Origin: Hyphochytrium catenoides
Taxonomy: Eukaryota; Protista; Hyphochytriomycota
DNA length: 41,936 nt
Direction: 5' to 3'
NCBI GenBank assembly: GCA_900088475.1
Contig: FLMG01004319.1
Location: forward strand, 1-41,936
Below, in pieces: positions 1,210 to 32,770 of this stretch. Each line of letters opens with the position of its first letter. Positions within the stretch are counted from its first letter, which is position 1. The position numbers were made by a program, and so were the translations under genes. The notes under the pieces were generated by a model that worked only from the letters and a program-made list of their open reading frames with translations, searched no databases and was not told where the DNA came from.

Positions 1210-2639
1210 GACCAGAGATCCCAGGGTGGAGATAAAAGCTAAGGATGGGAGCCAGAAGTTCACTGTGAAGCCTGCGAACAGTGACGGCTGGTGGAACTCT
1301 CTCTATCGCACCTACAAGACAGAGATCCCGGACCTCGTGCCAGGTATCTATATCTTCTTCTTCTCTCTCTCTCTCTGTGTCGCTCCCGGGTGCAAGTGCG
1401 CCTCTCTCTACTTGCTTTCTTACCCTTCTGTCTAAACAAAGCCACGCTACAGTCCCCTGAGCAATGTCACCGCCTTCCTCGTAACTATCCCCAGCTCTTC
1501 GTCATTCTCTCCTCTCTCCTCTAGTTCCTACTCTCTTAACTCGATCAAAACTCTTTTTCTTTCTCTTATACCTCTCTCTTCTCTCCCCCAACCCAGGCAA
1601 GGAATACACCTATCAGGTCTTCCTGAATAACAATGAGGGCTCAGCGCCGAAGAAGTTCAAAGCTCCCTACCCAGAGCTCAAGGGAACCAACGCCTCTCCA
1701 GACACTCCTTGGGGCTTCTTGGTTCTTGGAGACATCGGAATATTCCCCGCTTCCAGGAAGAACCTGAAGTTGATGGCGCAGGAGAACCTTGACTTCTATG
1801 AGCTGATGATGAACGTCGGAGACTTAGCCTACGCCTTTGGCATCGATAAAGTGTGGAACGAATTCATGGAGATGATTGAGCCTGTCGCCTCACGGATTCC
1901 GTGGATGACTTGCCCTGGCAATCATGTAAGGCGCTTCTCTGTCTCAAACCTTTCTCTCTCTGTCTTTTGCCATACCACGCTCAGCAAACTTGTCAACTTC
2001 GGCTACTACTCTTCTTCGTCAACCAGCACTTGCTAAAGGACTTCCATTACCCTCTTCCTCCCGTCTATTCCCTCGCTAAGCCATTCCTCTCTGGTCATCT
2101 CGTCACTTAGGAGTTGCTCGCAGTCGACAGTGGCTTAGAGNNNNNNNNNNNNNNNNNNNNNNNNNNNNNNNNNNNNNNNNNNNNTCACCACGATTAGCAC
2201 GGATGACGACTACTTCCCTGACACTGAGCAGTACAAGTGGCTGGAGCAGGACCTGAAGGCGGCGAACACACCAGAAGCTAGAGCTGCCAGGTGAGGAAGG
2301 GAATATGCGGAAGGTTTAGCTTGATGCGGAGAGTTACAAAGAAGAAGAGAGAGAGAAAGAGAGAGACACAGAGAGACGCTAGAAACAGAGAAAGCCCCTC
2401 CGCCCCCCAAAAAGACAACTTCTCATTTCCTCCTCCTAGGCCATGGGTGATTGTAGCCATGCACAAGCCTATGTATGGCACCTTTAATAGAAAACGCACG
2501 GGCGCCGATGCACGCAGAGGAGATCCTGATAGTCTCTTGAAGGATCTAGAGCCGCTTTTTATTAAGTATGAAGTTGATCTTGTATTCGCCGGGCACAAGC
2601 ACTTCTATGAGAGGTAAGTGGTCTTTGTTCTCCAAGCTA

Positions 2640-2676
<37 letters not shown>

Positions 2677-3007
2677 CTTTTATCTCTCCTCTTCAGTGGA
2701 TCTCACCATCTCTGTCTTCGCATCTTCTTCCCTTTCTCCCTCCCTTTGTAGGATGTTTCCCGTCAGCAACGGCGGTTTAAGCATCGGCTCTTCCTACTTA
2801 TCTCCGTCGTCTCCTGTGCATATCACGGTGGGCATGGGAGGCTTCATCCGCACGACTGACGACCTTGCACCGGAGTCATACTCTGCTTACAGAGAACAGA
2901 CTTATGGCTATGGCAGAGTCAGCTTCCTTAATGCCTCTGCTGTGAAGGTGGAGTATGTAGAGCAGGACTCCGAGAATGTGAGGGACTCTGTTATCATCAC
3001 CAAGTAG
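1210..3007 (+). CDS. Purple acid phosphatase (metallophosphoesterase, ACP7/PAP-like), multi-exon; 5' end unresolved
   Basis: Spliced exons (~1210-1343, 1597-1925, 2111-gap-2290, 2440-2613, 2752-3007) with GT-AG boundaries. They give all five PAP metal-binding motifs in order: GDIG, GDLAY, GNH|E, VAMH, GHKH. An FN3-like region (PDLVPG|KEYTYQV) precedes them and a GYGRV C-terminal motif follows. The start exon is obscured by the gap at 890-926. Confidence 0.92.
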
Positions 3008-4062
3008 GTCACATCGTAGTACAAGTGAGATCCGACCGCAGAAACAGAAAAGATATTTAAAAGAGAAAAGGCATGAGCGCTTGATCACTGCAGTATGGAA
3101 GAGAGGGACGCCGACAGCGGGACCGTCAAGAGGGCGACGATGAGGCAGAGAGCCCAAGTACGGCTCGTATGGACAAGTGGAACAAGTGGATATCATTAGC
3201 AATAGCTGCCTCGTGTCTGAGTATGAGACAGTCGATCGTCCCACATGTTTTGCTAAATCAAAGGGTAACGTTAATCTAAAGTCCGACCTTCTTTTTCATA
3301 AGGTCCTCATCCTGACAAAGTACCTTTGCCATAGGCGTAACGACGCCTGCCGCTGTCCAGCACAGGGATTCTGATCTCCTCGGTTGTTTGACGATCTCTG
3401 TTTTTTCTCTTGGGACGTCTGCGTCTATCTTGCGGGAGAAGACCTTGAACTCCTTAGCGAGGCCGAGACCTCCAGAGCTCATGGTCACGCTGATCCTACC
3501 GCTCACCTCAGGAAGAAATGATCCTTAGCTAGTAAACATGGAGGAGAGAACAACTTAAGAACTCTTGACACCACTAGGTACAAAGTATAGCTCTCTTTCT
3601 TAGCTCTATATTTGGCGGGCTAAGCAATGAAATTCTGAGTGTCAGATGGATAATAAAGGCCAAAGCGGCTGATTGTGCAAGGGTGATGAGACAGCCTGAA
3701 GAGGCAGCTCCCCAGTTTCCGGGTCCTTCTCTTTGTACTGATCTGGGGACAGAAGCATGGACGCGATATTTGGGCCAAGGGACTGGCCGCGCGAATGAGA
3801 AAAGCAAGAGTTGAAGAGTACCATCGCCACATGATCGTAGAAAAATTATCGTCGCTTTGTCCATAGTTGACCTTGTTACTAAGCGTTACGTCAAGCTCCA
3901 CCTATAGCTCTGTAGCTCTTCCTACCTCTTAGTGATTAGTAGCAATCTTCCCTACCTAGCGTCGCCTACTTACAATCAAAGATGTCAGCATGTGCGATGG
4001 AGCCTGCTTTCTTAGCCTCAGCTCCACCAGATATCACATTTCTTAAACCTAAAACCTCAGCC

Positions 4063-7000
4063 TCAAGCTTGGAACCACTCATTGAACATCTCCCTCACCC
4101 ATTCCTTCTTCTTCTGATGCCCTTCAGCTGAGGGTTCTGAGACTTCAAAGCTTGGCTGCTGTGGATCACTAAAGAGGTCCACGCTGATGGCCGCGCCGGA
4201 ATTGGTGCCCGTCTCTGTGAAATAGGGGAAAGGCAACAATGAGCCAAACGCCATGCCCAGCGAAAGGGCAAGAAAGGGTGAGATAAAACAAGCCCAAGAT
4301 GGGAGAGTTGAGTCAGCCGGTCAGTGGGCAGCTCAAGCCAGCCGATTAAGAAGAAGAGCCTAAAAATTGTAGCCCGAATTGGCTAGCGTCAAGCACTGAA
4401 GCAGTGCCCTTGAAAGGTGATGACAGTCGCACACACACAAAGCAGAAGAGCAGATACAGAGATGTATGCCAGCCCGTCAATATGTCCACAGGAGCTAGTT
4501 CCTCAACCCATTAAGTTCGTCTATCCTTTTCTCTTTTGACTTTCTTACCAGCGTAGCAAACCGCCACATATTTTTGTTTGGCTCTTGCTTCCTCCCCCCA
4601 ATTCCTCTGACCGGGTTCCTGCACCCCATGGACAATATTCTCGGCTACCACTCTCCCTTGATTGACGGCAAACCCGCCCGCCTTCGGGTGAGGCTTCGGC
4701 TTCTCTAAGGGCAACATAAGGTGGGCTGTGTCTCCAATGCAATACACTCCTTCGACCTGCGTCCGCAATGTCATCAGGTCCGCTGGGATCAGGTTCTTTG
4801 GGGTAGGGGACAGAGCTGCACAAGAGGCAAGGAACCTACAACAGGACGTGGGGAGAGGAGTGAGATATGCGACAGACAAGTACGAGAGAATAACAATGGA
4901 CACCCAAATAACTTCTGTCTACAGGGATCAGGAGTCATAGGGCAAATGGCACGAAAGTCAAAGAAAAGTAAACGCAGCCGGTCAGATGCGAGAACGTGAA
5001 GGCCGAAGAAGAAGGACTCCTGATGGCAGGAGACGCGATTTCTGGAGATAGATGAGGAGCTGGATCCACTTACTTTGCTCCTCTGTGTGGCACCATGCCT
5101 ATGAGAATTGAAAAATCTTCCTTCGAGTCATCCTCAAAGGTGATGCTACCTCCTTCTTTCTTGGTTCCAGTCACTGCTTTGGGATTCATCCCTGTCTTGA
5201 AGGTGATGTTCTTCTCCTCTAGAAGCGAGCGGAAAACCTTCGGATTCTTCTCCGGCACTGCGTCTGGTCCGGGCGTGGTAAGGATGACCTAGACATAGAG
5301 GAGGGTTAGATGGAGAGTACGCTTGCTTAGAAATAGATGCTGCTGGAATCCAAGAGATTGGGTAAACAGGAGGAACAGCGTATCTTGTGACAACAGTCTT
5401 CCCAAGTGTTACCTTAACGTTGTCTCGAACACCCTTCTCTCTCAGGATGCCATCCACCAAGAACGCGTACTCATAAGGAGCAGGTGGGCACTTGTAGGGC
5501 ATCTCCGCCACTAAAATGGCTACGGTCCCGCTAGTAATACTGTTGAGCTCTTCTCTGAGTGCAAGAACTTCTGATTTGTCACACATGTCGTAGGATGCCG
5601 CTTCTAGTCCCTCAACTGCTGCCTTCTCTGGCTGCACGCCGGTACTAATTACCAGCTCATCGTATGGGACAATCTTTTCTTGTTCTCCTTCGCCCAGTTG
5701 TTCTCTCACCACTACTCTCTTGCCTTCCGTGTCTAGGGTTTCGATGGCCCCGTGGATCCTGTGCACGTGCTTGAAGATAAGTTTCTCATAGCTCCTGGGA
5801 TCATCCTCCGCCGTCTGCACATTTCTTAGGTAGAACTGGTTTGAGGCGCCGATCTTGAACTCAGAGTTTTGCTCCACAAGGGTGATCTGAACCTGGACCA
5901 TGATATTGTCAGCACTAGGCGGCCCAAAATTAGATTATAAAGAGACACTTGCTGGTCGGATCATCGCACAACTTATAATTCCAGGAGCACCAAGCGGGAG
6001 ATAGAAAGACGCCAACACGGAGGACATAAGAGTCGTCAGACGGCGAGTGGGGGCGACAAGCTCAAGCGGAAACTGGGTGAGGGAGAAAGGTACTAGAAAA
6101 CTTGAAAAGAGTCGGTACCTTGCCCTCATTGCCATCCCCAGAGAGAAACTTGTCCAGCTCCTTGCAGACGGTCAAACCTCCGAACCCTCCGCCCAGGACT
6201 ACGACCTTCCAAGGAGCAGACGCGGTAGCTGTGGGTGCCACTACTCCTTCCGCGGGCTCTGAGGAAGCAGCAGGCGTCTCGCTAGTAGCGGCTTCTACTT
6301 CTGGCTTCTTTTCTCCTTCCTCTTTCTGTTCCTCGTCTTCCTTTTTCTGTTCCACCTGCTGCTCCCTCACTTCCTCCTTGTTCTCTTCTTCAGCTGGAGC
6401 AGGAGCCCCTACCGTTGCAGTGGTTTCCACGGCGGATTCCCCTCCTGTTAATCCCTCCACGATCGCTCCTACTGCCCCCTCTACTACTGCAGCAGCTGCT
6501 TGTGCTGCATTCTGCGCGGCAGAAGTCACTGAGCTCGCTGCGTTCTCCAGGGTTGAAGAGGAGACATGAGGCATCGCATCATTGGCGGGTATTGCAGGTC
6601 CAACATTAGCTGAAGGTTCCTCTGCTGATGGTTTAGGGACCTCCTCTGTCGCCGCATTCATTGCTTCTGGAGCTTTCTCCGAAGTCTCCGTCGCATTGCT
6701 AGGCATGTCCGGAGCTTTCTCAGAAACCTCTGCTGCCATCGGAGTCTCAGTAACTGCAGGAGCTGTGACAGCTGGTGCTGGAGGTCCGTCCGCAGGTGTA
6801 TCTACGACAGCGGCAGCAACTTCCACCGCAACATCCTGAGTAGAGACCTGTGTTAACTTATGAGCTGGTCTCTGACTATGTGATCAGGGAAGCGTGAACA
6901 CTCCTATCTTATAGTAACGATGGACGGGACGTCCTAGGTCGCCCGAACGGGGACGCCTCTGAGCAGCTGAACTCACCTCTGCGCCCGTTGACGTGACAGG

Positions 7001-7258
7001 ATTCTCCGTCTTTGGCTGTTCAGCTGCATCCAGGCTTGGCACCGCGGCTGTAGCATCTTCTGGCGACTTGAGTGCGGTTACTGGTGCTTCCACCGTGGTT
7101 GCTGGTGCTTCCACCGTGGTTGCTGGTGCTTCCACTGTGTTTGCTGGTGCTTCTACCGCGGCTGCTGGTGCTTCTACCACGGTGGGGCCCGCCTCCAGCT
7201 TAGGAGGCTGCTGTGTGGAGGCTGCTGCCGTGTCGGCCTTGCTGCTGGTGCATCCCAT
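4063..7258 (-). CDS. FAD-dependent sulfide:quinone oxidoreductase / flavocytochrome c sulfide dehydrogenase-family protein (type III SQR-like) with N-terminal MGC acylation motif and long A/E/P/T-rich spacer; 6 exons, ~710 aa
   Basis: Exons 7258-6977, 6835-6119, 5892-5413, 5288-5074, 4835-4549 and 4214-4063 are all GT-AG and phase-consistent (2133 nt). Motifs: KVVVLGGGFGG (FAD Rossmann), YDELVISTG, YKCPPAPYE, VYCIGD, PKAGGFA, AVCYAETG, and a C-terminal amphipathic helix (KKEWVREMFNEWF). Confidence 0.88.
7081..7180 (-). repeat. 21-bp coding tandem repeat (about 5 copies) encoding VEAPATT-like heptapeptides in exon 1 of the SQR-like gene
   Basis: Units of ctggtgcttccaccgtggttg on the + strand translate on the minus strand as VVEAPAAAVEAPANTVEAPATTVEAPATTVEAPVT. 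Confidence 0.9.
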
Positions 7259-7533
7259 TCTTCCAAATAGCAATAGAGAGATTCAGGTCACTAGTCAGTG
7301 CTTGCAGCTGTAGAATCTCAGGAGTGAGCTCTGCAGATCAGGGCCGCTGCGGCGAAAGGCGGCAATGCCGGGCGACGGTTATGAAGCGTCAAAGGATCCA
7401 CGGACGGTAGAGGAAACGTAGACCTGGTCGGTGAGGAAAGGAATCAGGTTCCCCCACGTTCTTTANNNNNNNNNNNNNNNNNNNNNNNNNNNNNNNNNNN
7501 NNNNNNNNNNNNNNNNNNNNNNNNNNNNNNNNN

Positions 7534-23616: not shown

Positions 23617-24588
23617 TCAACCTGTTATTATTCTCTCCAATCCTTCTTCCATGTCACTCGTAAAGCTGCTCTTTTGATAAACAAAGTTGACCCAGTTCCT
23701 ATAGAAGACTGCGGCGTCTGCCGTCCAGTTGCAGGTCGGCGTCCGTGTGTCATCGTCCATCGGAAAGTAGTTCGCAGGCAGCTCTATGGGGACGCCACTG
23801 CTCTTGTCTCTAAAGTACTCGCCAGCTAAGTCTTGCCTATCATACTCTGGATGGCCCTGGAAGTAAACCTCTCTTCCTCCTCTTCCTAGCGCCATCAGCC
23901 AGCCACATTCCTTGCTGTCCATCACGATCTCTATCTCTTTCCCTTTCTCTCTCAGCGCTCTGGTCGGTACATCTCCCCAGCGCGAATGAGGCGCAAGAAC
24001 AACGTCGTTGACATCGCTGAAGAGCTCTGACTGGATCTCTCTGTTGACCTCATGCCCATAGACGCCAAAGACTTTCTTAGGCGAGAGTGATCTCTCGATT
24101 CCATAGAAATGATGCAGAGCAAAGTGGCTTCCCAGACAAGAATAGACCGTGGACCAGACGTTGTCCTTAGCCCAGTCTAACACGCTGCAGAGCTCTTGAT
24201 AGTAGTGAATCCGCTCAAACTGCAGGAGCTTCCCGTCTTTATCCAGCTCTAAGTTGGCTCCCGTGACGAAGAGGCCGTCTAAGCCTCTGTCTTTCACCGT
24301 GCTGAACTTCTCATAGAAGCATTCCATCCGGTCCCGTCCAGTATTGGGCAGATAGGCGTCGAACCGGATGAGAATCGGGGAGATCTGCAATGGAGAGTTG
24401 CCGATAAGCCTGAAGAACTGGACCTCTGTCTTCTCTCTCACGGCCGCAGGCATCAGGTTGAGAAGACCTATCCGCAATGGTCGGATGTCCTGCTGCTCCG
24501 CTCGACTGGCGTCTAAGATAAAGACGCGGAAAGACCGAAGGACATCATAGACCGGAAACTTGGACCGTGAGGGGACGATGAGCGGCAT
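23617..24588 (-). CDS. metA: Homoserine O-acyl (acetyl/succinyl) transferase, MetA/HTS family, intronless, 323 aa
   Basis: An uninterrupted ORF with MetA signatures: QDIRPLRIGLLNLMP, KTEVQF.RL..NSPLQ, DGLFVTGANLE, catalytic Cys in YSCLGSH, K.FGVY.H, PHSRW, and the GHPEYD His/Glu of the catalytic triad. Confidence 0.93.
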   Translation of the reverse strand: MPLIVPSRSKFPVYDVLRSFRVFILDASRAEQQDIRPLRIGLLNLMPAAVREKTEVQFFRLIGNSPLQISPILIRFDAYLPNTGRDRMECFYEKFSTVKDRGLDGLFVTGANLELDKDGKLLQFERIHYYQELCSVLDWAKDNVWSTVYSCLGSHFALHHFYGIERSLSPKKVFGVYGHEVNREIQSELFSDVNDVVLAPHSRWGDVPTRALREKGKEIEIVMDSKECGWLMALGRGGREVYFQGHPEYDRQDLAGEYFRDKSSGVPIELPANYFPMDDDTRTPTCNWTADAAVFYRNWVNFVYQKSSFTSDMEEGLERIITG

Positions 24589-31315: not shown

Positions 31316-32770
31316 TTAGGATTCACGGAGTGAGAGCCGCGCTGCTCTGTTCTCCGCCAACCTCCTCTCGCAGAGACGTGAGAGATTATCTCTCAGCGCC
31401 GCTTCGACTATGCCAAGGGCATCCTTTCCCAGGTAATTCTGATGGAGATCAATCACCCGCAGAGATTCCAGATGTATTGCTCTGCGAAGAATCTCTGGTA
31501 TGGCACTTGCTCCCAGGCCTTCAATCCAGTTTCTAGACAGATCCACGTATTGAAGAGACGTTAAGGACGTATTGTGACGCAGAGCGCCAAGAAGGGAGAG
31601 CCCTCCGTAAGTAGTGATGCCATTGCCACTAAAGTCGATGATCTCCAGCGAAGTGAGCGTGATGTTACCAGCCAAAGCTCTGGCTAGAGCAGAGGCTCCA
31701 TCATCCCCAATGTAGTTTCCATGAAGATCAAGACATTGTAGGCCAGCCAAATCTGGAGCTTTCGCAATGACATCCGCCAAAGACTGAGCACCACTGGGGC
31801 CCATGCCAACGCCGCTGAGAACTAGACTCCTGAGCCTCAAGGGGCTTTGAAGTAGCTTCGCTATTGCCCCTACGCCCTCGTCACCGATGGGATTGCTGCC
31901 AAAACGAAGAGAAGCTAGTTCCAAAAGCATCGAATTGGCCTCGATGGCCTCGACAAACGCAATAGTACCGTCTTTGCCTATGGAGTTGCCATCTAACTCC
32001 ACAGATAAGAGAGAAGGAAGCGAGGACCGTCCTAAGGCCCGCGAAAACGCACCCAGTCCTATGTCCGTTATGCCATTGACACGCAGCGCGACACTTCGCA
32101 AGTCGGTACAGAGGTCCGGATGGAGCTCAATAAACTCTGCTAAGACCAACATTCCACTGTCTCCGACATCATTATAGTTGAGATTCAGAGATTGAAGCTT
32201 TCCCAGATTGCGCTTATTGACTTTTAAGCTCGCGAGCAGAGCCGATAGTCCCGTACACCTAATATTATTGCTGGCTAAGTTGACGGACTCAAGCTTCGGT
32301 AGAGAATAATTACCGATGATCTTCGCAAGCAGCTCCGCTCCGGCATCAGACAGATCGAGGTAGGTCAAGTCGAACTCTTTCAGTTGGCTTAAGGCCAAAG
32401 GATCTTCTTCAAGACAGTCAAGGAGGAAGTTCAGCGCCTCCGTTCCCGTCGGCGACGGAGACAAGGCAGGAGAAGAAGCCAAATGGGCAGAAAAGAAAGA
32501 GCTCAACTCCAGGCTCTCTCTCTCGCGTAAGCTCGAACAGATCTCCTCCTTTAACTCTTTGCACTGCTCTCGTCGGAGCTCCTCCCATAAGAGTCTCTTG
32601 CTCTTTTCGTGCTCTGCTCTCCGGCGTAGCTCTAATGCAATCAGATCTTCAGTTGTTGGCTTCCTCCGCTTCTTGAGTGTCATCTCAGAGGATGAGGGCA
32701 GTCCCATGGTGAACGAAGAGAGAGATGTACGAGGATGAGGAAGAGAGATTTGCTGGATAGCCTTCAGCAT
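31316..32770 (-). CDS. Ribonuclease-inhibitor-like leucine-rich repeat protein (NLRC3/RanGAP-like LRRs), intronless, 484 aa
   Basis: About 11 repeats of roughly 28-31 aa matching LxxLxLxxNxIGDxGxxxLA (e.g. LQSLNLNYNDVGDSG, LQCLDLHGNYIGDDGASALA), preceded by a basic/coiled-coil N-terminus (LKKRRKP). Confidence 0.88.
   Translation of the reverse strand: MLKAIQQISLPHPRTSLSSFTMGLPSSSEMTLKKRRKPTTEDLIALELRRRAEHEKSKRLLWEELRREQCKELKEEICSSLRERESLELSSFFSAHLASSPALSPSPTGTEALNFLLDCLEEDPLALSQLKEFDLTYLDLSDAGAELLAKIIGNYSLPKLESVNLASNNIRCTGLSALLASLKVNKRNLGKLQSLNLNYNDVGDSGMLVLAEFIELHPDLCTDLRSVALRVNGITDIGLGAFSRALGRSSLPSLLSVELDGNSIGKDGTIAFVEAIEANSMLLELASLRFGSNPIGDEGVGAIAKLLQSPLRLRSLVLSGVGMGPSGAQSLADVIAKAPDLAGLQCLDLHGNYIGDDGASALARALAGNITLTSLEIIDFSGNGITTYGGLSLLGALRHNTSLTSLQYVDLSRNWIEGLGASAIPEILRRAIHLESLRVIDLHQNYLGKDALGIVEAALRDNLSRLCERRLAENRAARLSLRES

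What the first reader, a model, noticed from the sequence alone, without database searches (positions are those of the whole stretch)
4063..7258. Prokaryote-type SQR/FCSD-family flavoenzyme on a lipid anchor and ~300-aa stalk: candidate non-mitochondrial membrane sulfide-handling system
Seen in sequence: a six-exon, in-phase gene starting MGCTSS, then ~300 aa of A/E/P/T-rich repetitive spacer, then a complete flavoprotein domain with YKCPPAPYE and AVCYAETG cysteines and PKAGGFA. Established: MGCxxS is the eukaryotic N-myristoyl plus S-palmitoyl signal for plasma or flagellar membranes. CPxAPxE/PKAG-type motifs typify bacterial/archaeal type III SQR/FCSD-like enzymes, whereas canonical eukaryotic SQOR is a mitochondrial type II enzyme with a KCAGAPQK-like motif. 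Inference: a prokaryote-derived sulfide/polysulfide oxidoreductase has gained introns and been retargeted to the cytosolic face of a surface membrane on a flexible tether, possibly for sulfide detoxification, sensing or persulfide signalling. I do not recognise this architecture from described proteins.
Basis: partly seen in the sequence, partly recalled or inferred. Interest (0 to 1): 0.82.

Follow-up and report, generated by a model that had tools for sequence, protein, structure and literature searches.

The report
Lipid-anchored sulfide-oxidase-like enzyme in protists
This protist gene encodes an enzyme of the sulfide-oxidising flavoprotein family with a fatty-acid membrane-anchor signal and a long floppy spacer instead of a mitochondrial address. 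The same layout recurs in several other protists, which points to an unstudied, non-mitochondrial way of handling hydrogen sulfide.

Summary
A six-exon, all GT-AG gene on the minus strand (7258..4063) encodes 710 residues: MGCTSSK, about 295 residues of acidic A/E/P/V/T-rich linker, then a complete 400-residue SQR/FCSD-type flavoprotein domain. Exons 2-6 tile the roughly 380-residue prokaryotic homologues end to end.

The domain is neither mitochondrial SQOR nor FSP1. It sits in a well-supported, mostly eukaryotic clade (Hondaea, Thecamonas, Pigoraptor, a diatom, MMETSP transcripts). That clade is sister to Thermoplasmatota-like archaeal proteins, inside a prokaryotic radiation whose nearest named family is type III SQR.

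Both redox cysteines, a third cysteine matching the Aquifex SQR Cys124 position, and both quinone-stacking aromatic positions are present.

The lipid-anchor N-terminus is not unique. Four clade members start MGC or MGSQC and one group starts MGNCC; their linkers run from about 20 to 115 residues. Prokaryotic relatives sit beside DsrE and rhodanese genes, and one is fused to DsrC.

Not shown: splicing of exon 1 to exon 2 (no usable RNA data), lipidation, location and activity.

Verdict: new variant of a known kind. It is probably an extramitochondrial, membrane-tethered sulfide:quinone-type oxidoreductase.

The parts
7238..7258 (-). Start codon and N-terminal MGCTSSK: N-myristoylation (Gly2, Ser6, Lys7) plus S-palmitoylation (Cys3) consensus
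   Evidence: Sequence. Matches PROSITE-type pattern G-{EDRKHPFYW}-x(2)-[STAGCN]-{P}. An in-frame stop lies 8 codons upstream.
6977..7258 (-). Exon 1 (94 codons, phase 0): acylation motif plus A/P/V/E/T-rich repeats
   Evidence: The GTGAGT donor is at 6976. If unspliced, the ORF ends 31 codons after the donor.
7076..7178 (-). 21-nt tandem repeat, 4.9 copies, 90% matches, encoding (T/N)(T/A)VEAPA heptads
   Evidence: Tandem Repeats Finder.
6836..6976 (-). Intron 1 (141 nt, GT..AG); the join is unverified by RNA
   Evidence: No transcript data span it.
6119..6835 (-). Exon 2 (239 codons): acidic low-complexity linker, then the start of the catalytic domain
   Evidence: AlphaFold2 (single sequence) gives pLDDT below 50 for 132 of 239 residues. 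Two helices are predicted at exon-2 residues 93-131 (Ala-rich) and 154-171 (E/K-rich). Two 151-nt metatranscriptome contigs lie at 6332-6482 and 6490-6640.
6176..6205 (-). FAD-binding Rossmann motif VVVLGGGFGG (residues 305-314)
5413..5892 (-). Exon 3 (160 codons): core of the flavoprotein domain. Carries Cys437 (YDMCD, 5578-5592) and the Cys468 motif MPYKCPPAPYE (5470-5502)
   Evidence: Pfam FCSD_central and Pyr_redox_2. PDB 5n1t 1.9e-9. Cys437 aligns with A. aeolicus SQR Cys124 and Cys468 with Cys156. Conservation table.
5074..5288 (-). Exon 4 (215 nt): second beta-alpha-beta domain. It lacks a GxGxxG NAD(P)H motif
   Evidence: Weak Pyr_redox hit.
4549..4835 (-). Exon 5 (287 nt): GD motif VYCIGD (4730-4747), PKAGGFA (4667-4687), and Cys658-Tyr659 at its 3' end
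   Evidence: PKAG aligns to the PKTG of solved SQRs, and Cys658-Tyr659 aligns to A. ferrooxidans Cys356-Phe357.
4063..4214 (-). Exon 6: completes AVCYAETG. Carries the C-terminal helix KKKEWVREMFNEWFQA (4066-4113) with Trp699, then the TGA stop
   Evidence: In the family profile, the K..W/F position aligns with A. ferrooxidans ..KVAF(394)EK. Trp is present in 25 of 27 clade sequences; the two exceptions are one truncated sequence and one Ile.

Best explanation
This is an intact nuclear gene for a lipid-anchored, extramitochondrial member of an undescribed, mostly eukaryotic clade of type-III-like sulfide:quinone oxidoreductase (SQR) homologues.

Shown here: the gene structure; a myristoylation/palmitoylation-type N-terminus; a roughly 295-residue acidic, mostly disordered linker; and a complete FAD domain. 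That domain has the SQR redox pair (Cys468, Cys658), the conserved Glu474, a third cysteine (Cys437) at the position of A. aeolicus SQR Cys124, and aromatic residues (Tyr659, Trp699) at the two positions that sandwich the quinone head group in A. ferrooxidans SQR.

Inferred: Gly2 is myristoylated co-translationally and Cys3 is then palmitoylated. This fixes the chain to the cytosolic leaflet of a plasma, flagellar or endomembrane. The tethered catalytic domain docks on that membrane through its short C-terminal amphipathic helix. It oxidises H2S (or a closely related sulfane-sulfur species) on the Cys468-Cys658 bridge and passes two electrons through FAD to a membrane quinone. It hands the sulfane sulfur to a thiol or carrier acceptor. 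The anchor would compensate for the missing second C-terminal membrane helix of classical SQRs. The linker length looks like neutral repeat expansion rather than a tuned stalk.
For: Gene model and motifs.

Collinearity of exons 2-6 with uninterrupted homologues.

Family assignment: Pfam FCSD_central. A family profile against PDB gives SQOR 230 bits, FCSD 190-198, SQR type I about 180-187 and FSP1 98. An AlphaFold2 model of homologue P0010 has pLDDT 91.8. Its best structural matches are SQOR, FCSD and SQR, all at TM 0.70-0.74 and 19-23% identity.

Nearest named family: type III SQR by NCBIfam.

Phylogeny: the window falls in a 24-row clade with all named eukaryotes (SH-aLRT 98). That clade is sister (98) to Thermoplasmatota-like archaeal proteins.

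Active site and quinone site: alignments to A. aeolicus and A. ferrooxidans SQR and the conservation table. Alignments to FCSD stop before the C-terminal helix.

Acylation motif as a family trait: P0010 MGSQCS (Hondaea), P0041 MGCVSS, P0172 MGCLQSK, P0193 MGCTLS, P0028 group MGNCCRS. No clade member shows an obvious mitochondrial presequence, and many start directly at the Rossmann fold.

Sulfur chemistry in the wider family: DsrE in 11 loci and rhodanese in 13 of 80 prokaryotic loci, mostly directly adjacent and on the same strand. One bona fide type III SQR is fused to a DsrC domain. A published type III SQR sits in an operon with TusA and DsrE2 and is induced by H2S (PMC10205796).

Disordered linker.
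Against: No transcript evidence joins exon 1 to exon 2. The only RNA run held two 151-nt contigs inside exon 2.

No member of the eukaryotic clade, its archaeal sister group or the surrounding roughly 380-aa prokaryotic subfamily is known to me to have been characterised, so substrate and acceptor are extrapolated from solved SQRs that are only about 20% identical.

The aromatic after Cys2 is not conserved across the eukaryotic clade (F or Y in 13 of 27). That weakens the quinone-site argument for the clade as a whole.

The nearest relatives of the window protein (P0011, P0173; 38% identity) have no N-terminal extension at all.

A 295-residue tether is an odd design for an enzyme that must sit on the membrane to reach quinone.

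The DsrE/rhodanese linkage is seen in deeper prokaryotic branches, not in the immediate archaeal sister group.

One subclade member (P0016 group) lies on a contig with bacterial-looking neighbours, so the clade may not be purely eukaryotic.

Myristoylated proteins can also end up on or in mitochondria.
Confidence: 0.5

Rival explanations
1. Same anchored flavoenzyme, different chemistry. It acts on another sulfur species (persulfide, polysulfide, thiosulfate, selenide) or delivers electrons to a soluble or protein acceptor rather than to membrane quinone. The lipid anchor then only localises it.
For: No characterised close relative exists. The similarity to SQOR, SQR type I and FCSD is equally low. 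The aromatic after Cys2 varies within the clade. The second C-terminal membrane helix of SQRs is absent: profile alignments end near residue 400 of the 430-437-aa SQR chains, and the homologue model has a single terminal helix. A long tether suits a domain that works off the membrane. Selenide is a known ligand of A. ferrooxidans SQR crystals (entry title).
Against: Both redox cysteines, the Glu and the C-terminal aromatic aligned with Phe394 are nearly invariant. FCSD-type features are absent: there is no cysteine at the position of the FCSD 'YYTCY' motif. By my recollection, not checked here, that is the flavin-linked Cys42.
Confidence: 0.25
2. The MGC exon is not part of the main mRNA, or the motif is not used. 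The protein would then be a soluble cytosolic enzyme like its nearest relatives, which start at the Rossmann fold.
For: The exon 1-2 join is unverified. In-frame Met codons exist in exon 2. P0011, P0173 and many clade members have no extension.
Against: The donor (GTGAGT) and acceptor are canonical and the junction is phase 0. A stop lies 8 codons upstream of the ATG. It would be a remarkable coincidence for an optimal MGCxxSK start to sit in frame upstream of a gene whose homologues in other protists carry the same motif. Exon 2 stays open for about 200 codons of linker that would have no purpose.
Confidence: 0.12
3. It is a mitochondria-associated enzyme after all, on the outer membrane or in the intermembrane space. 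Some myristoylated proteins are directed there (from my own knowledge, not checked here).
For: Canonical eukaryotic sulfide oxidation is mitochondrial. The database annotation of the Hondaea homologue says 'mitochondrial', but that is automatic.
Against: No presequence is present. Cys3 next to Gly2 is the classical dual-acylation signal for plasma or endomembranes. The domain is not an orthologue of SQOR.
Confidence: 0.08
4. It is an FSP1/NDH-2-like NAD(P)H:quinone reductase that merely resembles SQR.
For: FSP1 is likewise N-myristoylated.
Against: The second GxGxxG NAD(P)H-binding motif is replaced by VAILVAEMPYKC, which carries the SQR cysteine. The family profile scores FSP1 at 84-98 bits against 180-230 for SQR, FCSD and SQOR.
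Confidence: 0.03

Closest known systems
Type III sulfide:quinone oxidoreductase (SqrC; Caldivirga maquilingensis, Methylacidiphilum fumariolicum; NCBIfam NF049943)
   Same: It is the best-scoring named family. It shares the compact size of about 380-400 aa, the P-[YF]-K-C-P-P-A-P-x-E and PKAG motifs, the redox cysteine pair, and the aromatic after Cys2 and in the C-terminal helix. The prokaryotic relatives are linked to DsrE, rhodanese or DsrC, as the published type III SQR operon is to TusA and DsrE2.
   Different: Scores are far below the family cut-off: 78-131 bits against 525, while P0053 passes with 567. It falls in a separate, strongly supported clade. It has Cys instead of Tyr at the position of A. 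aeolicus Cys124, and Trp instead of Phe in the C-terminal helix. It is eukaryotic, has introns, and carries the lipid-anchor motif and linker.
Mitochondrial SQOR (type II SQR; human 6oi5, 8dhk)
   Same: Same fold (TM 0.71-0.73), the top PDB profile hit (230 bits), the same redox cysteine pair, and a eukaryotic host.
   Different: About 20% identity. The human motif PVKCAGAPQK contrasts with MPYKCPPAPYE here. The window protein has no presequence, a shorter C-terminal membrane region and a different evolutionary origin.
FSP1/AIFM2 (N-myristoylated extramitochondrial CoQ reductase)
   Same: The same design logic: a two-Rossmann-domain flavoprotein taken to non-mitochondrial membranes by an N-terminal myristoyl group. 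Its proposed job, reducing membrane quinone, is also the same.
   Different: It belongs to a different branch of the superfamily (98 bits against 230). FSP1 uses NAD(P)H through a second GxGxxG motif that is absent here. FSP1 lacks the SQR cysteine pair and has no long linker.
Type I SQR (Aquifex aeolicus 3hyv, Acidithiobacillus ferrooxidans 3t31)
   Same: Three cysteines at equivalent positions: Cys124/156/347 in A. aeolicus against Cys437/468/658 here. The quinone-stacking aromatics also correspond: Phe357 and Phe394 in A. ferrooxidans against Tyr659 and Trp699.
   Different: 19-22% identity. Type I enzymes have two C-terminal amphipathic helices and about 30-40 more residues. They are bacterial and have no lipid anchor.

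Membership tests
SQR/FCSD flavoprotein superfamily | N-terminal FAD-binding Rossmann GxGxxG, plus the GD and PK(A/T/S)G motifs | tested here: met
   VVVLGGGFGG (residues 305-314), VYCIGD, PKAGGFA. PKAG aligns to the PKTG of solved SQRs.
SQR/FCSD flavoprotein superfamily | Redox-active cysteine pair (A. aeolicus Cys156/Cys347; A. ferrooxidans Cys160/Cys356) | tested here: met
   Cys468 and Cys658 align to these residues. They are invariant in 59 of 61 family sequences compared.
SQR/FCSD flavoprotein superfamily | Significant sequence and fold similarity to solved members | tested here: met
   Pfam FCSD_central 32.5 bits against a cut-off of 27. PDB 5n1t 1.9e-9 with exon 3 alone. Family profile 180-230 bits. 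The homologue model reaches TM 0.70-0.74.
Type III SQR (NCBIfam NF049943) | Score at or above the curated cut-off (525 bits) | tested here: not met
   Exon 3 scores 78.5 bits and eukaryotic homologues 96-131 bits. P0053 passes at 566.8. Caveat: the model is an 'exception' model for the selenoprotein subtype, and the spliced window protein could not be submitted whole.
Type III SQR (NCBIfam NF049943) | Placement inside the type III clade | tested here: not met
   The type III-like group (P0053, P0004, P0023, P0231, P0121) forms a separate clade (SH-aLRT 100). The window lies in a distinct clade on the other side.
Type III SQR (NCBIfam NF049943) | Sulfide-dependent quinone reduction | not testable with these tools
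   Needs an enzyme assay.
Mitochondrial SQOR (type II) | Orthologue-level similarity and the KCAGAPQK-type active-site motif | tested here: not met
   19-21% identity for homologue P0010. The human motif prints as PVKCAGAPQ(K/E) against YKCPPAPYE. Scores to SQOR, FCSD and type I SQR are about equal.
Mitochondrial SQOR (type II) | N-terminal mitochondrial targeting presequence | tested here: inconclusive
   By inspection the N-terminus is MGCTSSKADTAAAST, followed by an acidic linker with a net charge of about -40. That is unlike a basic amphipathic presequence. No predictor was available.
FSP1/AIFM2/NDH-2 | Second GxGxxG dinucleotide motif for NAD(P)H | tested here: not met
   The equivalent strand-loop reads TVAILVAEMPYKCPP. 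The family profile scores FSP1 at 84-98 bits.
Flavocytochrome c sulfide dehydrogenase (FccB) | Flavin-linked Cys (Cys42 of A. vinosum FCSD, by my recollection) and no SQR-type C-terminal helix | tested here: not met
   The 1fcd 'YYTCY' motif aligns to window 'FKIGAS', with no Cys. FCSD alignments end before the family's C-terminal helix, while SQR alignments include it. No cytochrome gene was recognised among the nearby ORFs scanned against Pfam.
Dual-acylated (myristoyl plus palmitoyl) N-terminal anchor proteins | Met-Gly start; a permitted residue at position 3; Ser, Thr or another small residue at position 6; not Pro at 7; Cys close to Gly2 | tested here: met
   MGCTSSK fits the PROSITE-type pattern and has Cys3, Ser6 and Lys7. 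The same holds for P0010, P0041, P0172 and P0193.
Dual-acylated (myristoyl plus palmitoyl) N-terminal anchor proteins | Actual lipid attachment and membrane localisation | not testable with these tools
   Needs metabolic labelling, mass spectrometry or imaging.

The most novel reading that the evidence does not exclude
Protists from several supergroups have an extramitochondrial sulfide-oxidation system. A dual-acylated SQR on the cytosolic face of the plasma, flagellar or endomembranes would burn H2S to keep the non-mitochondrial quinone pool reduced. That would make it a sulfide-fuelled functional analogue of FSP1, combining sulfide detoxification, membrane antioxidant defence and local persulfide production. 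The enzyme would derive from an archaeal, type-III-like SQR.
Probability: 0.3. Interest if true: 0.8.

Novelty: new variant of a known kind. Interest (0 to 1): 0.6.

Why it matters
All characterised eukaryotic sulfide:quinone oxidoreductases are type II enzymes of the inner mitochondrial membrane. A second, independently acquired SQR lineage that carries a plasma- or endomembrane lipid anchor would mean that some eukaryotes oxidise sulfide outside mitochondria. That is of interest for life in sulfidic sediments and decaying plant material. It also bears on persulfide signalling and on the recently recognised role of extramitochondrial ubiquinol (the FSP1 pathway) in protecting membranes. The family also offers a natural experiment: a lipid anchor may replace the missing second amphipathic helix of a monotopic membrane enzyme. 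Database entries such as the Hondaea protein are currently mislabelled 'mitochondrial SQR'.

Tried and rejected
1. Transcript evidence. The look-up of sequencing runs found one RNA run with 6% of the sampled words. Laying it (3,301 letters, within the operators' limit) gave only two 151-nt contigs inside exon 2 and no junctions. Exact searches of JGI metagenome contigs for the spliced exon 1/2 junction and for a 30-mer of exon 3 found nothing.

2. Submitting the whole protein. I used exons by reference and folded homologue P0010 instead.

3. Close relatives. The exhaustive HMMER search with exon 3 found 798 relatives, none above 37% identity among those aligned over most of the exon (up to about 50% over partial stretches) and none with E below 1e-30. 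This organism's own protein and any close orthologue are therefore absent from the 15-billion-protein collection.

4. Careful tree. The 'careful' IQ-TREE run did not finish in two 300-s calls. Support values are therefore SH-aLRT from the quick search only.

5. Placement against all six SQR types. A phylogeny with curated reference sequences could not be done, because no referenceable copies of those sequences were available. Placement rests on NCBIfam scores, PDB profile scores and the tree of retrieved homologues.

6. Literature. Searches for an acylated, extramitochondrial or eukaryotic type III SQR found nothing relevant. The Lencina 2013 paper on the Caldivirga enzyme was not held.

7. 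Readings rejected. Mitochondrial SQOR orthologue, FSP1/NDH-2, FccB, pseudogene and bacterial contamination (four introns lie inside the domain).
Full report
**Observation**

The gene lies on the minus strand. Reading 7450..3950 and assembling six exons gives a 2133-nt CDS of 710 codons with a single terminal stop. The exons are 7258-6977, 6835-6119, 5892-5413, 5288-5074, 4835-4549 and 4214-4063, and every intron is GT..AG.

The first ATG (7258) is preceded by an in-frame stop 8 codons upstream. If the first donor were not used, the ORF would end 31 codons later.

The product starts MGCTSSK. Residues 8-299 are A/E/P/V/T-rich (53 acidic, 13 basic) and include a 21-nt x 4.9 tandem repeat. From residue 305 (VVVLGGGFGG) to the C-terminus there is a complete flavoprotein domain.

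The only correction is that the last two junctions split codons, so the exons are not all 'in phase', although the frame is kept.

**Is the model right?**

The end of exon 2 and exons 3-6 align, junction by junction and without gaps at the joins, to uninterrupted prokaryotic proteins of about 380 aa. The match runs from the Rossmann motif to the last residues: window ...EWVREMFNEWFQA against P0002 ...QFEKERFFRWFGE (A1). That validates four of the five introns by homology.

The exon 1/2 join lies in low-complexity sequence and could not be tested with RNA. One metatranscriptome labelled 'plant metagenome' held only two 151-nt contigs, each with one mismatch, inside exon 2. Exact junction and exon searches in metagenome contigs were blank. 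Support for the join therefore comes from splice-site quality, frame and comparative evidence (see the lipid-anchor section below).

**What the domain is**

- Pfam gives FCSD_central above threshold, plus Pyr_redox_2.
- With exon 3 alone the best solved relatives are FCSD flavoproteins and A. aeolicus SQR.
- A 53-sequence family profile scores human SQOR at 226-230 bits, FCSDs at 187-198, type I and type V SQRs at 175-187, NDH-2 at about 142-160 and FSP1 at 84-98.
- An AlphaFold2 model of the Hondaea homologue P0010 (pLDDT 91.8; N-terminal 32 residues disordered) superposes equally well on SQOR, FCSD and SQR (TM 0.70-0.74, 19-23% identity).

So this is a separate branch of the SQR/FCSD superfamily. 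It is not an orthologue of mitochondrial SQOR. Human SQOR shows PVKCAGAPQ(K/E) where this protein has MPYKCPPAPYE. It is also not FSP1/NDH-2, because the second GxGxxG NAD(P)H motif is replaced by the cysteine-bearing loop.

The only specific NCBIfam model hit is type III SQR (NF049943). The scores form a gradient:

| Group | Bits against NF049943 (cut-off 525) |
|---|---|
| P0053 (bona fide member) | 567 |
| Type III-like P0004, P0231 | 348-362 |
| Prokaryotic genes linked to DsrE/rhodanese | 208-246 |
| Archaeal sister group | 161-185 |
| Eukaryotic homologues | 96-131 |

**Relatives and phylogeny**

An exhaustive HMMER search of 1.84 billion cluster representatives with exon 3 gave 798 hits. 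None aligned over most of the exon exceeds 37% identity.

Several of the best hits are eukaryotic:
- Hondaea fermentalgiana GBG30163.1, auto-named 'SQR, mitochondrial'.
- Thecamonas trahens XP_013757280.1.
- Pigoraptor chileana.
- Epithemia clementina.
- MMETSP transcripts.
- P0187, on a contig with homeodomain/PHD, MYND, RING and CTLH genes.

In two maximum-likelihood trees (quick search, LG+C20) the window protein falls in a clade containing all of these (SH-aLRT 99 and 98). It is nearest to the environmental sequences P0011 and P0173 (38% identity). The clade is sister (98) to a small group that includes a Thermoplasmatota MAG and another archaeal MAG. The type III-like sequences form the outgroup.

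The wider prokaryotic family is common in Nitrosopumilus and Nitrososphaera, Chloroflexota, Actinomycetota and others. The ESM Atlas gives it only generic names.

One member of the 'eukaryotic' clade (the P0016 group) lies on a contig with bacterial-looking neighbours, so the clade may not be exclusively eukaryotic.

**Active site**

Residue-level alignments and a 61-sequence comparison give the following.

| Window residue | Equivalent in solved SQRs | Conservation in the family |
|---|---|---|
| Cys468 | A. aeolicus Cys156; A. ferrooxidans Cys160 | Invariant, with one exception |
| Cys658 | A. aeolicus Cys347; A. ferrooxidans Cys356 | Invariant, with two exceptions (one of them a truncated sequence) |
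| Glu474, Glu661 | — | Glu474 near-invariant; acidic at 661 in all sequences that cover it |
| Tyr659 | A. ferrooxidans Phe357 | F or Y in 13 of 27 clade sequences |
| Trp699 | A. ferrooxidans Phe394 | Trp in 25 of 27 clade sequences (one truncated, one Ile); Phe in prokaryotes |
| Cys437 | A. aeolicus Cys124 | Cys in 22 of 27 clade sequences and both sister sequences; Tyr in 31 of 33 other prokaryotic sequences, including all type III-like ones |

Phe357 and Phe394 are the two residues reported to sandwich the quinone head group (PMC9666304). From my own recollection, not checked here, Cys124 is the flavin-linked cysteine of A. aeolicus SQR.

Alignments to FCSDs end before the C-terminal helix. 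Alignments to SQRs include it but stop about 30-40 residues before the SQR C-terminus. The family therefore looks like an SQR that keeps the first C-terminal helix, which contacts quinone, and lacks the second, which binds the membrane.

**Sulfur context in prokaryotes**

I clustered ORFs around 80 prokaryotic homologues. A DsrE-family gene occurs in 11 loci and a rhodanese gene in 13 loci, mostly directly adjacent and on the same strand. These loci are spread over Pseudomonadota, Bacillota, Actinomycetota, Chloroflexota, Nitrospirota, Nitrososphaerota and Methanobacteriota.

One bona fide type III SQR (P0053) is fused to a DsrC domain. A published type III SQR is co-operonic with TusA and DsrE2 and is induced by H2S (PMC10205796).

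This supports sulfide or sulfane-sulfur chemistry for the family. The linkage is seen in deeper branches rather than in the immediate archaeal sister group.

**The lipid-anchor motif is a family trait**

Clade members with N-terminal extensions include:

| Sequence | N-terminus | Linker |
|---|---|---|
| P0010 (Hondaea) | MGSQCS | about 40 aa |
| P0041 (MMETSP) | MGCVSS | about 115 aa, repetitive and helical |
| P0172 | MGCLQSK | about 65 aa, A/P/V-rich |
| P0193 (MMETSP) | MGCTLS | about 22 aa |
| P0028, P0162, P0163 | MGNCCRS | about 36 aa |

The first four and the window protein fit the myristoylation pattern and have a cysteine within residues 3-5.

Other members, including the window's nearest relatives, begin directly at the Rossmann fold. 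None has an obvious presequence.

Recurrence of so rare a start in one family is strong indirect support that exon 1 belongs to this gene. Linker length is not conserved.

A single-sequence AlphaFold2 run on exon 2 predicts mostly disorder, with one Ala-rich helix and one E/K-rich helix.

**Mechanism and likelihoods**

I put the chance that this is a real, intact gene with this domain composition at about 0.9.

I put the chance of the full reading at about 0.5. That reading is dual acylation, tethering to a non-mitochondrial membrane, sulfide oxidation on the Cys468-Cys658 bridge, and electron transfer through FAD to membrane quinone held between Tyr659 and Trp699.

The main alternatives are a different sulfur substrate or electron acceptor (0.25), an unanchored soluble form (0.12), mitochondrial-surface targeting (0.08) and FSP1-like NAD(P)H chemistry (0.03).

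**Context**

Nearby ORFs scanned against Pfam show no sulfur-metabolism link. A purple-acid-phosphatase-like gene lies downstream on the plus strand.

Earlier unchecked notes of this scan call the genome a fungus-like or oomycete-like stramenopile. They also report a myristoylated triple-FSP1 gene elsewhere in it. If true, that would make lipid-anchored quinone reductases a theme in this organism.

**Novelty**

I found no paper describing an acylated or extramitochondrial SQR, or eukaryotic members of the type III-like radiation. I rate it a new variant of a known kind, with an interest score of 0.6.

Noticed in passing
P0053 (prokaryotic protein), residues 400-581: A bona fide type III SQR (566.8 bits against the 525 cut-off) carries a C-terminal DsrC-like domain (Pfam 74 bits) ending ...PKPRGCV. 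It is a natural fusion of SQR and a sulfur-relay protein.
   Followed up: partly
L017, L022, L023, L027, L028, L029, L031, L041, L046, L065, L070 and others (genome-contig loci): There is a recurrent rhodanese - DsrE - SQR-like gene arrangement, mostly on one strand, across at least seven prokaryotic phyla. In Nitrosopumilus the conserved upstream neighbour is instead a short-chain dehydrogenase.
   Followed up: partly
P0088, P0206, P0216 (bacterial, 472-481 aa): These are SQR-like proteins with an N-terminal extension of about 95 aa. The extension gives weak AhpC/TSA and Redoxin hits below the Pfam cut-offs, so they may be redoxin-SQR fusions.
   Followed up: partly
window 23617-24588 (-): An intronless 323-aa ORF has a very strong homoserine O-succinyltransferase (HTS/MetA) Pfam match (5.4e-92).
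   Followed up: partly
window 31316-32770 (-): A 484-aa uninterrupted ORF is made of RNI-type leucine-rich repeats (LRR_6, 8.8e-28).
   Followed up: no
window ~1700-3010 (+): Exons of a purple-acid-phosphatase-like gene (Metallophos, Metallophos_C) lie downstream of the SQR-like gene on the other strand.
   Followed up: no
window 7466-7533 and seven other N runs: An assembly gap lies 208 bp upstream of the start codon, so the promoter and 5'-UTR of the gene are incomplete in this assembly.
   Followed up: no
L082 (contig of P0171, P0016 group): A member of the otherwise eukaryotic clade sits beside alpha-amylase, PEMT/ICMT and AbrB-family genes in a compact, intron-free arrangement that looks bacterial. 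This may reflect transfer between domains within the clade.
   Followed up: no
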